A DNA stretch of 63,496 nt, filler included, from Hyphochytrium catenoides (lineage: Eukaryota > Protista > Hyphochytriomycota): assembly GCA_900088475.1 (NCBI GenBank). It is 11 parts of 11 records of this genome, joined end to end, with 100 filler letters (N's around TTAATTAATTAA, not from the genome) between each part and the next. Parts side by side here need not be neighbours in the genome. Positions count along the whole stretch, not along the records: positions 33,029 to 51,069 come from FLMG01003185.1; 10 more parts are not named here. One strand, given 5' to 3'. A model generated the notes under the pieces. It saw only the letters and a program-made list of their open reading frames with translations. It was not told where the DNA came from and did no database searches. Below, piece by piece: positions 33,449 through 37,163 of the stretch. How positions within the stretch are numbered: position 1 is the first letter of the stretch; each line of letters begins with the position of its first letter. The translations under genes and the position numbers were made by a program.

Positions 33449-33805
33449 ATGCCTCCAGCTGGGAGCTCTGCACTGAAGCGGAGTCGAGACAAGCTTGGCG
33501 CTGGCGGCCCGTCTGGCCGACAGACGAAGGCGCAGCGGCACACACTGGAAGATCGGGCCCATGGCGGAGCGATCAACTTTCTCAGCTTGCCGGTACATTC
33601 TCAACGCTCCTCTCTCTCCTTGCTTGTTTCCTAGATCAATGGTATCGGACAACTGCTGCTCTCTCTCTCTCTCTTTATTCCTCTCTCTCCATCTTTTAGA
33701 TGTCCTTTCCTCTCCCCTTTCTCCTCTTTCCTTCCCTTTTGGTCTGCCCCACACCACGTCAATTGGCCATTCATTGTCGCCCCTGACACTCCCGCTGCCA
33801 TACTC

Positions 33806-33849
<44 letters not shown>

Positions 33850-35374
33850 GCTCTCTGGTATATACCAGAGCTCTTCTCTCCTAAAGTATGTACAGCACTA
33901 TCAGATCCACACCAGTGCCATCCCCTCACATAAAGAGCTGGCGGAAGTCGTGGGCGGACACTTTAAACGAAGACTCTTCGTGGACGAGTATCAGTGCATT
34001 CCAAGATTTGTCAACTATGTACGCTGCCATCTGATGGACTCTTATTAAGAGAGAGAGAGAGAGAGAGAGAGAGGAAGAGACTATCTCCGACTTGTCTTCT
34101 CTCCCCCTTTCACCCTCTTCCAGTCATCGTGCCACTATCTCGCTCCGTTTTCCCTAGCCCTCCTCCTTGACCTACCTCTGTCTGTGACGCTCCCTCACCC
34201 TCATGAACTCTCTCTCTCTTTCTGTCTCTCTCTCTGTCTCTCTCCCTGTCTCTCTCCCTCCTTTCTCTGTCTCTTATGTGTTGGCCCAGTTAAGTACAGG
34301 GCAGAAGGCTACCTGGAGAGAAGGGTACGAGGTTCCCGCTAAAGACAACACGCTGACGATAGGTCACCGTCGAGTCACAGCGAAGAAGACCGTCGCCAAG
34401 AAGAAGAAGCCGACCAAGAACAAGACAAAGCCTTCTGCTTCTCCTCCTCCATCTCTTCCACCCTCACGCTCTCCGTCTCCTATCAAAGCTGCGAAAGACA
34501 GTCATGGAAAGAAGGACAAGAAAGAAGATGAGACGGCACCCGTGAGTATCCTTTTCAGCGGGCTGTGAAGATAAAGAGAAACGAAAAGAGAGAGAGAGAG
34601 AGAGAGAGAGAGGAAAGAAATAGCGAAAACTTCCCAATCAGAAGCAAGAAAGACCTTCCTTCTCTTCCATCTCGTTGCATTCCTAATGAAATGACTTTCT
34701 TCTTTGTATCTCCTACTCTGACCCTCTCTCCCTCTCTTCCTGTCTCATGCTGATCTAGACAAAGAAGGCAGTGCCCAAGCCTCCGTCTAAAAAGAAAAGC
34801 TATCCCAAAAAGAAGTCAACGTCCTCCGCTGCTAACACTTCCACGCCACAAAGCAAATCTACCCCAGCCAAGGTAGCTTTCCCCCTCTAGCTCTCTCCCC
34901 TCTCCCCTCTCCGTTTCTTCTTCTTCTTCTTCTCTCTCTCTCTATATATCTCTATCTATCTATCTTTTTTTTCTTTCTGTCTCTCTTTCAATCTCTTTCT
35001 CTCTCTTATATGATGTCTTTCTTTTGTACGCCTTTCTTTTCCTCTCTCCCACTCCTAGTTTCTGGGAGTTCTACTCTCCTCAGACCACAGAGTCGAACTA
35101 TTCCGCGTTCTTTCGTTGTTTCTCTCTTCATTAGAAGAGTCAGAGCTCTGAGCCAGCCAACATCAAAGCGAAAGAGACGCCGTCTCCTCCTGCAGCGGTG
35201 AAAGAGAAGCCACCTTCTCCCGGTCCCGATGAGAATCACGACCCTGAGATGGAGGAGGAAGAAGTAGATGTAAGAGGACTTTCTTTCTCGGAGATAGATG
35301 CTTCCGTGACCTATAGACATATCGCTATTCTCCTCTGTTTCGTCGTCTTTCTGTGTCTCTTATCTCGTAGGTCT

Positions 35375-35409
<35 letters not shown>

Positions 35410-35423
35410 CCCCTTCTAAAACT

Positions 35424-35456
<33 letters not shown>

Positions 35457-36453
35457 CCCTCTCTCTCTCTCTCCTCCTATCTCATTTCTTTTCATGGGAT
35501 CCTTTCTAAACATCTCTCTCTCTCTAATTCCTCTCAGGGCGGTGTCTTCTGTATATGTAAGAAGGGAAGCTACGGCGAGATGATCGCCTGCGATGGCGAC
35601 AAATGTCCAGACCCGGAGAACTGGTATCATCTCAACTGTGTCGGACTCAAAGAGGCGCCAGAGGAATGGTCAGTCTGGCTTGGTTCTCTTTCTCTCTTTC
35701 CCCTGTCACTCTCTATTCCCTCTTTTCTCTCCTTTTCCGCTGCTCTAACATCGCACTCTTCCTCACGCGTTCGTGCTTCTCAATTCCCGCTGTGGGACCA
35801 GGTTATGTCCTCAGTGCGCTGCTCCCAGTACTGCAAATGGACAGAAAGAAGCGGCGACAGACGGGGATCAAGGTAGCGTCTTCTTTCTCCATCCACAGGC
35901 TGAGCGTCTTCCTCTTGTCAGACATCTTAGTTTGGCAACCGGCTTCTGTCTCTTTTCCCTTCCGGCTTTGTCTGAATCACTCGCTCTCGCTCAGCTTCCG
36001 TTGTCGACTTCTTGAAGGTCCTCTCGCGATCTTGTATGTACGCTGTTCTTTGTTTCGGCTCATCCTCTCTCGCTCTGTTTCTCCACCCATGTCACTCTCT
36101 CTTTCTTACTCTCTCTCTTGCTTGTCTGCCTTCACGGGCTCTGCTGCTACGACAACCTCCTGCGCCTTCCCTCGTTGGCCTCTGCAAGAAGGAAACTAAC
36201 TGCTTCTTCCCTCCTTCCAGCTAAATCGGGGAAAACTGGTGGGATGACCTACTGCACGATGATCCAGCAGTCGCTAGAGAAGATGCCAGGGAGGAGGGTA
36301 CGAGGCTGGTGCTTGGGTGTCTTTCTCTCTTTTCCCCGCTTTCACAATCTCTCTCTTGCTTCCTTAATTCTCTGTCTCGGTTCTGTATGTTCTCTCTCTC
36401 TCTCCGAGTCTCTCTTTCTGTTGGACACTCTAGTCCCGCCCTTCGTTGCCTTG

Positions 36454-36504
<51 letters not shown>

Positions 36505-37163
36505 GTCTCTCTCTCTCTCTCACTGTCCACGTCATCTATATTCTCTCTGGTTGTGTCTTCCTTTGTCTTTTCTCACTACATCTAAACCGTGTCTCTCCCT
36601 TTTATCTCTCTTCAGGGCACCTTCCAAGAAATCTGCGAGACAGTACAGAAAGAGTTCCAGCAGCAACTGAACTGGAAAGCAGAAAGGTAGCGTGGCAACC
36701 TTCTGAGATGCAGGGGAACGGAGAGAAAGACTCTGCAGCGTCTCTCTTTATGTTTCTCTCTCTATATCTCTTATCCTGGACCTCCATCTACTGTCTGTCT
36801 GTCTCTTTCAAGGTCCGGTTTTGAGCCTTTTACTTCTATCTGGTGCTGTCAGAAGTCATCTGTTCACTTCTTCTTCCCGATATTCCTCCTTTCTCTCTTA
36901 TCTGTCTTACCCTCTTTTTTCTCTCTTTCCCGTCTCTGTCCCTCTCTTCCTCTCACACCGGTCTCTTGCTCAGTCGCTCACGTCTACGCACTCTCTTCAC
37001 TCGCTCACCTACGCATTCTTTTCTCTCTCTCTCTCTTGTATGGTGCCACAGTGATGTCAAGAAGACTCCAGTCTGGAAAGCCTCGGTCCGGAAGATCCTC
37101 TTCTCCAATAATCGTTTCCTCCGACACGATGACAATACGTTTGGGTTCAGTAAGGACAAGTAG
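33449..37163 (+). CDS. 418-aa chromatin protein: SAP30 Sin3-binding-like domain, K/P-rich linker, ING-type PHD finger, forkhead-like winged helix
   Basis: Exons 33449-33592, 33869-34018, 34290-34541, 34759-34872, 35135-35269, 35538-35668, 35802-35872, 36221-36297, 36616-36686, 37052-37163. All introns are GT-AG and phase-compatible, 1257 nt from ATG to TAG. PHD: VFCICKKGSYGEMIACDGDKCPDPENWYHLNCVGLKEAPEEWLCPQC. Confidence 0.8.

What the first reader, a model, noticed from the sequence alone, without database searches (positions are those of the whole stretch)
33449..37163. One protein joining a SAP30-type Sin3-binding domain, an ING-type PHD finger and a forkhead-like winged helix
Seen: ten GT-AG exons, hidden in the ORF track by microsatellite introns, splice in phase to 418 aa. 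The N-terminal INFLSLPSSSLLKYVQHYQIHTSAIPSHKELAEVVGGHFKRRLFVDEYQCIPRFVNY fits the SAP30 Sin3-interaction pattern (dF..L....L.rY..h..l......k.eL...V..HF....vdE...i..F). The middle is an ING/Pho23-type PHD (SYGEMIACD...WYH..CVGL). The C-terminal TYCTMIQQSLEKMPGRRGTFQEICETVQKEF...WKASVRKILFSNNRF follows forkhead helices 1-3 (SY..LI..AI...P....TL..IY..I...F...W.NSIRHNLS.N..F). Known: SAP30 and ING1/2 (yeast Sap30 and Pho23) are separate subunits of the Sin3/Rpd3L HDAC complex, and canonical forkhead factors are described mainly from opisthokonts. Inference: a self-contained Sin3-HDAC targeting subunit that binds Sin3, reads H3K4me3 and binds DNA. I do not know this architecture from described proteins.
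Basis: partly seen in the sequence, partly recalled or inferred. Interest (0 to 1): 0.8.

Follow-up and report, generated by a model that had tools for sequence, protein, structure and literature searches.

The report
SAP30–PHD–forkhead-like fusion chromatin protein gene
A ten-exon gene in an intron-rich protist genome probably encodes one 418-residue protein that joins a Sin3-docking SAP30 domain, an ING-type histone-reading PHD finger and a divergent forkhead-like winged helix, three modules that yeast and animals keep on separate proteins of the Sin3 histone deacetylase system.

Summary
Ten exons (33449-37163, + strand), all with GT..AG introns, splice in phase to 418 aa. All three domain calls pass Pfam's curated cut-offs:
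- SAP30_Sin3_bdg scores 37.3 bits against a cut-off of 22.2.
- PHD scores 30.9 bits against 24. Its 20 best solved relatives are all ING/Yng/Pho23 fingers.
- Forkhead scores 31.1 bits against 27, and all 12 solved-structure matches are forkhead domains.

The PHD and forkhead matches need their exons joined, which supports junctions 6/7, 8/9 and 9/10. Variants in a second sample avoid exons (6 of 40), and 5 of the 6 exonic ones are synonymous.

Caveats:
- No RNA run could be obtained, so "one transcript" is inferred.
- The winged helix is divergent. Only 1 of 4 FOXO3 base-contact residues is kept, wing 2 is absent, and weak signals point to the related HARE-HTH family.
- No usable 3D model was obtained.
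- The full-length protein could not be searched, so the rarity of the architecture is untested.

Most likely it is a SAP30-position subunit of a Sin3/Rpd3L-type deacetylase that carries its own H3K4me3 reader and a DNA or nucleosome-binding module. I rate it a new variant of a known kind, of moderate interest.

The parts
33449..33592 (+). Exon 1 (aa 1-48): start codon, basic N-terminus, first residues of the SAP30 domain
   Evidence: First in-frame ATG of an open frame, with a GT donor at 33593. It has no Pfam match of its own, so there is no SAP30 zinc finger.
33869..34018 (+). Exon 2 (aa 49-98): core of the SAP30-type Sin3-interaction domain. The Pfam match covers aa 47-96, window 33587-34012 with intron 1 in between.
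   Evidence: PF13867 at E 4e-9, 37.1 bits for this exon alone. With exon 1 added it scores 37.3 bits over profile 1-49/53. The only PDB match is the SAP30 SID of entry 2ld7. The nearest Atlas clusters are SAP30_Sin3_bdg. A synonymous variant lies at 33964.
34290..34541 (+). Exon 3 (aa 99-182): start of the Lys/Ser/Pro-rich basic linker
   Evidence: Open only in the predicted frame, with AG/GT borders. No Pfam match. A rhizosphere-metagenome contig is 100% identical over 34341-34491.
34759..34872 (+). Exon 4 (aa 183-220): linker
   Evidence: Phase 0, AG/GT borders, no stop in frame.
35135..35269 (+). Exon 5 (aa 221-265): end of the linker, with an acidic patch before the PHD
   Evidence: Phase 0, AG/GT borders, and the only open frame. 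The whole linker (aa 99-265) has pI 9.9 and is 66% K/S/T/P/A.
35538..35668 (+). Exon 6 (aa 266-308): ING-type PHD finger, first six zinc ligands and the methyl-lysine cage positions F269, S276, M280, W294
   Evidence: PF00628 at 24.9 bits for this exon alone. PDB matches are ING1, ING3, Yng1, Yng2, ING2, ING4/5 and Pho23, with E from 6e-11 to 3e-7. A synonymous variant lies at 35651.
35802..35872 (+). Exon 7 (aa 309-333): last Cys-x2-Cys of the PHD (C311, C314) and a short linker
   Evidence: Adding it raises PHD to 30.9 bits and the full profile 1-47/47. C4HC3 is complete.
36221..36297 (+). Exon 8 (aa 333-358): helix 1 of the winged helix
   Evidence: Part of the Forkhead match over aa 341-409. 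It carries two synonymous variants and one Thr-to-Ser variant in the linker just before the domain.
36616..36686 (+). Exon 9 (aa 359-382): helix 2 and the helix 2-helix 3 loop
   Evidence: Part of the Forkhead match. A synonymous variant lies at 36627.
37052..37163 (+). Exon 10 (aa 382-418 plus stop): Trp390, helix 3 (A392, R395, K396, F399 at the FOXO3 base-contact positions), short hairpin, stop codon
   Evidence: Forkhead profile positions up to 66/88. Alone it matches nothing in Pfam or among forkhead structures, and its Atlas features lean towards HARE-HTH.

Best explanation
One ten-exon gene encodes a 418-aa basic nuclear protein (pI 9.5) with four parts: a SAP30-type Sin3-interaction domain (aa 47-96), a 167-aa Lys/Ser/Pro-rich disordered linker, an ING-type PHD finger (aa 270-314) and a divergent forkhead-type winged helix (aa 341-about 416). 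Inferred mechanism: the SAP30 domain docks on the PAH3 domain of Sin3, as SAP30 does constitutively in the Sin3L/Rpd3L deacetylase. This makes the protein a resident subunit. The flexible basic linker lets the PHD finger bind the H3K4me3 tail of promoter nucleosomes, as ING1/2 and Pho23 do. The C-terminal basic winged helix adds a contact with DNA or the nucleosome. That contact probably has low or non-canonical sequence specificity, because three of the four forkhead base-contact residues are changed. The result is a two-point chromatin anchor fused directly to the Sin3-docking module, doing in one chain what SAP30, the ING PHD and a DNA-binding recruiter do as separate proteins elsewhere. 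Shown here: the exon structure, the three profile matches, the residue patterns and purifying selection on the frames. Inferred: a single transcript, Sin3 binding, H3K4me3 reading and DNA binding.
For: Gene model: all junctions are GT..AG and in phase, giving 418 aa. Exons are 35-51% pyrimidine and introns mostly 69-81%. Domains: SAP30_Sin3_bdg at 37.3 bits against a cut-off of 22.2, with SAP30 SID (2ld7) as the only PDB match. PHD at 30.9 bits with complete C4HC3, and the 20 best PDB matches are ING-family fingers with the SYGEMI motif and the cage positions Phe/Ser/Met/Trp kept. Forkhead PF00250 at E 2.6e-7, 31.1 bits against a cut-off of 27, covering helices 1-3. All 12 PDB matches are forkhead domains, with FOXO3 best at E 0.0016. 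The PHD and forkhead domains appear in full only when neighbouring exons are joined. Selection: in run X2, 6 of the 40 listed variants lie in exons, which are 34% of the length (p 0.007). Five of those six are synonymous third-position changes (p 0.003-0.017), and they are spread over exons 2, 6, 8 and 9, so over all three domains. Context from papers: SAP30 binds PAH3 1:1 at about 10 nM, and Foxk1 is a Sin3A partner (PMC6295471). ING1b binds SAP30 (PMC13454933). The Pho23 PHD is flexibly tethered and reads H3K4me3 in Rpd3L (PMC10224958).
Against: No RNA evidence was available: no RNA run was listed. The piece starts only 420 nt upstream of the ATG, and an AG lies at 33444-33445, so an extra 5' exon cannot be excluded. 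The winged helix keeps only Arg395 of the four FOXO3 base-contact residues; Asn208 becomes Ala, His212 becomes Lys and Ser215 becomes Phe (PMC2175300). It also has a short wing 1 and no wing 2. Weak rival signals point to HARE-HTH: Atlas score 0.83, and NCBIfam RNA polymerase delta at E 0.017. The single-sequence AlphaFold model is poor (pLDDT 60.5), and fold searches on it were uninformative. No relative with the same architecture was found, so conservation between species is unknown. The pairwise match to human SAP30 is weak (E 0.48).
Confidence: 0.6

Rival explanations
1. The gene and its SAP30 and PHD parts are as described, but the C-terminal module belongs to the HARE-HTH group (the ASXL / RNA polymerase delta type) or to an unnamed winged-helix family, not to the forkhead family proper. 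It would then act as a general or modification-sensitive DNA-binding module, as proposed for ASXL, which also combines such a domain with a PHD finger.
For: Language-model features of exon 10 (helix 3 plus hairpin) are nearest to clusters carrying PF05066 HARE-HTH: 54 of 100 hits, best score 0.83. NCBIfam gives RNA polymerase subunit delta at E 0.017, 15.2 bits, over residues 25-82 of the 86-aa query (aa 357-414). The helix 3 base-contact residues of forkhead are not kept, the hairpin is short and wing 2 is absent (PMC2175300).
Against: Pfam Forkhead scores 31.1 bits, above its curated cut-off, while PF05066 was not reported even at E<=10. PDB matches are forkhead domains only. The Atlas score is below the tool's own 0.9 reliability line and used only 36 residues. 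There were no PADLOC matches.
Confidence: 0.2
2. The model joins two or three neighbouring genes or alternative transcripts, for example a small SAP30-like protein, a PHD protein and a 78-aa winged-helix protein starting at Met341. The three-domain protein is then never made, or is only a minor isoform.
For: No transcript evidence exists. Retention of intron 2 would end a 107-aa SAP30-only product after nine codons. An in-frame ATG (Met341) opens the winged helix.
Against: The gaps between the domain-coding exon groups are 133-365 nt, of the same size and pyrimidine-rich repeat make-up as the other introns (except intron 3, which is 50% pyrimidine). That leaves no room for promoters and terminators. 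Every exon has GT/AG borders in a compatible phase, with no terminal-exon stop before 37161. Linker exons 3-5 are open only in the predicted frame, except that exon 4 has one other open frame.
Confidence: 0.12
3. The protein is real but is not a Sin3 complex subunit. The SAP30-like fold serves another partner, and the protein is a free-standing H3K4me3-guided chromatin or transcription factor.
For: The pairwise similarity to human SAP30 SID is weak (E 0.48). The only real relative found in the exhaustive search of 1.84 billion cluster representatives is a 431-aa protein with three tandem SAP30-like repeats, an arrangement unlike canonical SAP30. The SAP30 zinc finger is absent.
Against: The Pfam family is defined on the Sin3-binding region itself and is matched well above its cut-off over 49 of 53 positions. 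Fungal Sap30 also lacks the animal zinc finger (my own knowledge, not checked here).
Confidence: 0.08

Closest known systems
SAP30 / SAP30L (animals) and Sap30 (yeast), the PAH3-bound core subunit of Sin3L/Rpd3L
   Same: It has the Sin3-binding region (PF13867), matched at 37.3 bits over profile positions 1-49 of 53. This includes the L-x-x-Y and V-G-x-H-F motifs aligned to human SAP30 in 2ld7.
   Different: It has no N-terminal SAP30 zinc finger. The SAP30 domain sits at the N-terminus and is followed by about 320 further residues carrying a PHD finger and a winged helix, which canonical SAP30 proteins lack.
ING1/ING2 (animals) and Pho23/Yng1/Yng2 (yeast), H3K4me3-reading PHD subunits of HDAC/HAT complexes
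   Same: The PHD finger is of the ING subtype. The 20 best solved matches are all ING family, with E down to 6e-11. The SYGEMI motif, the C4HC3 ligands and the cage positions (Phe for Tyr, Ser, Met, Trp) are kept.
   Different: No ING N-terminal coiled-coil domain (PF12998) is present. That domain is what anchors Pho23 to Rxt2 in Rpd3L (PMC10224958). Here the anchor would be the SAP30 domain. There is a two-residue insertion before the cage Trp, and no polybasic tail after the finger.
Forkhead (Fox) transcription factors, closest to the FOXO class; FOXK1 and yeast Fkh1/2 as Sin3-recruiting examples
   Same: It matches Pfam Forkhead above the gathering cut-off over helices 1-3. The aromatic residue of helix 1, the Trp before helix 3 and Arg395 are kept. 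The helix 2-helix 3 loop has a FOXO-like length. Forkhead factors are known partners of Sin3 (Foxk1: PMC6295471; Fkh1 is among the repressors tested for Sin3 binding in PMC10163088).
   Different: The FOXO3 positions Asn208, His212 and Ser215 are Ala, Lys and Phe here. Wing 1 is short, and the protein ends 18 residues after helix 3, so there is no wing 2 or C-terminal basic region. The domain lies at the end of a chromatin-complex subunit rather than in a transcription factor.
ASXL proteins and other HARE-HTH chromatin proteins
   Same: They combine a small winged helix with a PHD finger in a chromatin regulator. There are weak feature and profile signals towards HARE-HTH.
   Different: PF05066 is not matched in Pfam. 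The order of domains differs, since ASXL has the winged helix at the N-terminus and an atypical PHD at the C-terminus. There is no DEUBAD domain, and the PHD here is ING-type.

Membership tests
SAP30 family (Sin3-binding region, PF13867) | Profile match to the Sin3-binding region above the curated cut-off | tested here: met
   E 3.4e-9, 37.3 bits against a cut-off of 22.2, profile positions 1-49/53. The only PDB match is SAP30 SID, 2ld7.
SAP30 family (Sin3-binding region, PF13867) | N-terminal SAP30-type zinc finger (animal SAP30/SAP30L) | tested here: not met
   Exon 1 and the 420 nt upstream give no such match. The finger is not universal in the family (my own knowledge, not checked here).
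SAP30 family (Sin3-binding region, PF13867) | Physical binding to Sin3 PAH3 | not testable with these tools
   The organism's Sin3 is not available and no multimer prediction is offered.
ING-type PHD finger | Complete C4HC3 zinc-ligand pattern and a PHD profile match | tested here: met
   Ligands are C270, C272, C283, C288, H296, C299, C311 and C314. PF00628 scores 30.9 bits against a cut-off of 24 over the full profile.
ING-type PHD finger | Closest to ING-family fingers, with the methyl-lysine cage residues kept | tested here: met
   The 20 best PDB matches are ING1-5, Yng1/2, png2 and Pho23. F269, S276, M280 and W294 align with the cage and groove residues of ING1. The identity of the cage residues comes from established ING2/ING1 structures and is my own knowledge.
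ING protein family (whole protein) | N-terminal ING coiled-coil domain (PF12998) | tested here: not met
   No match in exons 1-5 at E<=10. It is therefore not an ING protein and carries only an ING-type finger.
Forkhead (Fox) domain family, PF00250 | Profile match above the curated cut-off | tested here: met
   E 2.6e-7, 31.1 bits against a cut-off of 27, profile positions 5-66/88. All 12 of 12 PDB matches are forkhead domains.
Forkhead (Fox) domain family, PF00250 | Conserved helix 3 base-contact residues (FOXO3 Asn208, Arg211, His212, Ser215) | tested here: not met
   Aligned residues are Ala392, Arg395, Lys396 and Phe399, so 1 of 4 is kept (residue roles from PMC2175300).
Forkhead (Fox) domain family, PF00250 | Three helices, three strands and two wings | tested here: inconclusive
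   The single-sequence AlphaFold2 model has pLDDT 60.5, with helices at aa 343-352, 361-375, 381-384 and 388-401 in the expected order, but no reliable tertiary model. Fold searches were uninformative. The sequence ends too early for wing 2.
HARE-HTH (PF05066) | Profile match to the family | tested here: not met
   It was not reported by the Pfam scan at E<=10. There are only sub-threshold hints: NCBIfam RNA polymerase delta at 15.2 bits against a cut-off of 72, and an Atlas score of 0.83.

The most novel reading that the evidence does not exclude
A forkhead-type winged helix works here as a built-in chromatin-anchoring module of a constitutive Sin3-HDAC subunit in a non-opisthokont, probably an amoebozoan, and not as the DNA-reading head of a transcription factor. 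If relatives share this arrangement, the forkhead domain may have begun as a linker-histone-like nucleosome or DNA-binding module of chromatin complexes. The Sin3-forkhead partnership seen in yeast (Fkh1/2) and animals (FOXK1) would then descend from an ancient physical linkage.
Probability: 0.12. Interest if true: 0.75.

Novelty: new variant of a known kind. Interest (0 to 1): 0.5.

Why it matters
Sin3/Rpd3L complexes are thought to reach chromatin through several loosely tethered modules on separate subunits: SAP30 as a structural staple on PAH3, the ING/Pho23 PHD for H3K4me3, and DNA-binding recruiters on PAH1/2. A natural fusion of these three functions is a Rosetta-stone-type argument that they act together at one nucleosome. 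It also gives a compact, testable model for bivalent targeting by a histone tail plus DNA. In addition it would add a non-transcription-factor context for a forkhead-type domain outside animals and fungi. That bears on the origin of the Fox family, which has been placed before the amoebozoan/opisthokont split (PMC9828451). The value is limited by the lack of transcript evidence, by the divergent nature of the winged helix, and by the fact that lineage-specific shuffling of chromatin domains is common in protists.

Tried and rejected
- **RNA support.** No RNA run was listed for the locus. The 'any' search gave DNA runs only. Organism B (X6) shared only microsatellite words.
- **Relatives.**
  - An exhaustive phmmer search of exon 2 against 1.84 billion cluster representatives gave two hits. 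One was a spurious repeat protein (P0001). The other was a 431-aa protein with three SAP30-like repeats (P0002). The window's own protein was not among them, so this genome seems to be absent from the protein libraries.
  - A metagenome scan with exon 2 found nothing.
  - Word-based searches with the PHD-plus-winged-helix part (153 aa) and with the winged helix alone (86 aa) found no candidates. These searches only see proteins of 0.55-1.75 times the query length.
  - The full 418-aa protein has no reference, and I did not type it. No full-length or architecture-level search was therefore done.
- **Exon 10 alone** matched nothing relevant in PDB.
- **PADLOC** gave no match for the winged helix.
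- **Papers not held.** The SAP30-PAH3 structure paper (PMC3149371) and Sebé-Pedrós et al. 2011 were not held.
- **Literature searches** for the three-domain combination found nothing relevant.
- **Rejected: a stramenopile origin.** Nothing supports it. The pyrimidine-rich repeat introns, about nine introns per gene, introns of about 230-270 nt, 454-era runs and an unannotated assembly all fit the published description of Physarum polycephalum (PMC4758236). This is an inference from genome style, not a sequence identification.
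Full report
**1. Observation**

Ten exons on the + strand join with GT..AG introns and compatible phases into a 1257-nt frame of 418 codons. 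The exons are 33449-33592, 33869-34018, 34290-34541, 34759-34872, 35135-35269, 35538-35668, 35802-35872, 36221-36297, 36616-36686 and 37052-37163. The frame ends at the TAG at 37161-37163.

The nine introns are 133-365 nt long and 73% pyrimidine on the coding strand, with CT microsatellites. The exons are 44% pyrimidine. This explains why the ORF list shows only fragments. Linker exons 3 and 5 are open only in the predicted frame, and exon 4 has one other open frame.

**2. Domains, tested by profile**

- **SAP30 domain.** Exon 2 alone matches Pfam SAP30_Sin3_bdg at E 4e-9, 37.1 bits, against a gathering cut-off of 22.2. With the end of exon 1 added, the match covers profile positions 1-49 of 53 at 37.3 bits. 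The only solved structure matched at E<=10 is the SAP30 Sin3-interaction domain of entry 2ld7. The nearest Atlas clusters are also SAP30_Sin3_bdg.
- **PHD finger.** Exon 6 alone matches PHD at 24.9 bits. With exon 7, which supplies the last Cys-x2-Cys, it reaches 30.9 bits and the full profile. The C4HC3 ligands are complete. The 20 best PDB matches are all ING-family fingers (ING1-5, Yng1, Yng2, png2, Pho23), with E down to 6e-11. Other PHD classes follow only after them. The SYGEMI motif is kept, as are the positions that form the methyl-lysine cage in ING fingers (here F269, S276, M280, W294). The role of those residues is established knowledge, not tested here.
- **Winged helix.** Exons 8, 9 and 10 give nothing separately. 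Their spliced product, aa 333-418, matches Pfam Forkhead at E 2.6e-7, 31.1 bits against a cut-off of 27, over profile positions 5-66 of 88. All 12 PDB sequences matched at E<=10 are forkhead domains: FOXO3, FOXO4, FOXO1 and FoxD3, with a best E of 0.0016.

For the PHD and the forkhead, the match also depends on the predicted splice junctions.

**3. Is it one gene?**

No RNA run could be listed. The second search gave DNA runs of a coded organism A, plus rhizosphere metagenomes. I laid a second sample of organism A (X2) and the metagenomes on the locus.

X2 carries a second haplotype. Of the 40 listed variants, 6 fall in exons, which make up 34% of the length (binomial p 0.007). Five of those six are synonymous third-position changes. 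The sixth is Thr338Ser, in the short linker before the winged helix. The chance of five or more synonymous changes out of six is 0.003-0.017. The exonic variants lie in exons 2, 6, 8 and 9, so each of the three domain-coding parts shows purifying selection in the predicted frame. Six further variants were not shown by the tool.

The gaps between the domain-coding exon groups are ordinary introns in size and make-up, and there is no in-frame stop before 37161. I therefore put about 85% on a single gene, but this remains an inference.

The 5' end is also open. The piece begins only 420 nt upstream of the ATG, and an AG precedes it at 33444-33445.

**4. How good is 'forkhead'?**

The alignment to FOXO3 keeps three features: the aromatic residue of helix 1, the Trp before helix 3, and Arg395. 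According to the FOXO3a-DNA structure, Asn208, Arg211, His212 and Ser215 of helix 3 make the base contacts (PMC2175300). Here the aligned residues are Ala392, Arg395, Lys396 and Phe399, so only one of four is kept. The hairpin after helix 3 is short, and the protein ends 18 residues after helix 3. There is thus no wing 2 or C-terminal basic region, both of which contribute to DNA binding in FOXO3a.

Two weak signals point to the related HARE-HTH winged helix.
- Atlas features of exon 10 are nearest to clusters with PF05066. The best score is 0.83, which is below the tool's reliability line.
- NCBIfam gives RNA polymerase subunit delta at E 0.017, 15.2 bits.

Against these, the Pfam scan at E<=10 did not report PF05066, and PADLOC gave nothing. 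A single-sequence AlphaFold2 model placed four helices in the expected order but was of low confidence (pLDDT 60.5), and fold searches on it were meaningless.

My reading is a divergent forkhead-type winged helix at about 70%, HARE-HTH-like at about 20%, and another winged helix at about 10%. The domain is basic (pI 9.5, 14 Lys/Arg in 78 residues), which fits nucleic-acid binding. Canonical forkhead-site recognition is unlikely.

**5. Mechanism**

Facts from papers:
- SAP30 occupies Sin3A PAH3 constitutively at 1:1, with about 10 nM affinity, through a tripartite interaction domain. Transcription factors such as Foxk1 are sub-stoichiometric partners (PMC6295471).
- In yeast Rpd3L, Sap30 engages PAH3 with at least three helices and staples Sds3 to Sin3. 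The Pho23 PHD is joined to the core by a long flexible tether and reads H3K4me3 (PMC10224958).
- ING1b binds SAP30 directly (PMC13454933).

The protein here lacks the ING N-terminal domain that anchors Pho23 in the complex, and carries a SAP30 docking domain instead. The most economical reading has three steps. First, the SAP30 domain fixes the protein on Sin3. Second, the 167-aa basic, Lys/Ser/Pro-rich linker (pI 9.9) acts as the flexible tether. Third, the PHD and the winged helix give a two-point hold on promoter nucleosomes, on the H3K4me3 tail and on DNA. All functional steps are inferred from family membership, and none was tested.

**6. Comparison and novelty**

The protein is a member of the SAP30 family by its defining domain. 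It carries an ING-type finger without being an ING protein. It carries a forkhead-type winged helix that fails the family's recognition-helix signature.

I found no description of this combination and no relatives in the domain-level searches I could run. Those searches were limited by short queries and length windows. The full-length protein could not be submitted because it has no reference, so I cannot say how widespread the architecture is. Lineage-specific recombination of chromatin modules is common in protists, so I class this as a new variant of a known kind.

**7. Source organism**

The tools code the organism. The locus has strand-asymmetric pyrimidine-rich repeat introns, nine introns in this gene, small assembly gaps and 454-era runs, and the protein is absent from the protein libraries. 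All of this matches the published description of the Physarum polycephalum genome (PMC4758236). That is a guess from genome style, at about 60%.

**8. Verdict**

The function is plausible but untested. The interest is moderate.

Noticed in passing
window 37751-40956, minus strand: A multi-exon gene for a carboxyl transferase, by Pfam PF01039 in four ORF pieces covering profile positions 1-493. It is probably the propionyl-CoA carboxylase beta chain. It is convergent with the finding's gene and its last coding ORF ends about 590 nt from that gene's stop codon. Its introns are purine-rich on the + strand, so they are pyrimidine-rich on their own coding strand.
   Followed up: partly
window 48102-50196, minus strand: A phytochelatin synthase gene, by Pfam PF05023 in three ORF pieces. 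It ends in a long 287-aa ORF, most of which has no Pfam match.
   Followed up: partly
window 45592-46644, plus strand: An uninterrupted 350-aa ORF starting with ATG, with no Pfam match. This is unusual in a stretch where other genes are split into many small exons.
   Followed up: no
protein P0002: The only real relative of the SAP30-like exon among 1.84 billion cluster representatives is a 431-aa protein with three tandem SAP30-like repeats. This is itself an unusual arrangement for this domain.
   Followed up: no
window 34341-34491, 36030-36177 and 35488-35650: Two rhizosphere metagenome runs (X4, X5) hold contigs that are identical or nearly identical to this locus. The source organism, or a very close strain, therefore lives in plant-root soil.
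   Followed up: partly
window 33600-36950: Run X2, a second sample of the same species label, shows a second haplotype at about half depth. It has dense differences and small indels in introns 1, 7, 8 and 9, and none were listed between 33965 and 35313.
   Followed up: partly
window about 38440-38480 and 50300-50550: Short runs of N (assembly gaps of about 36-45 nt) interrupt neighbouring genes. They fit an assembly that breaks at low-complexity introns.
   Followed up: no
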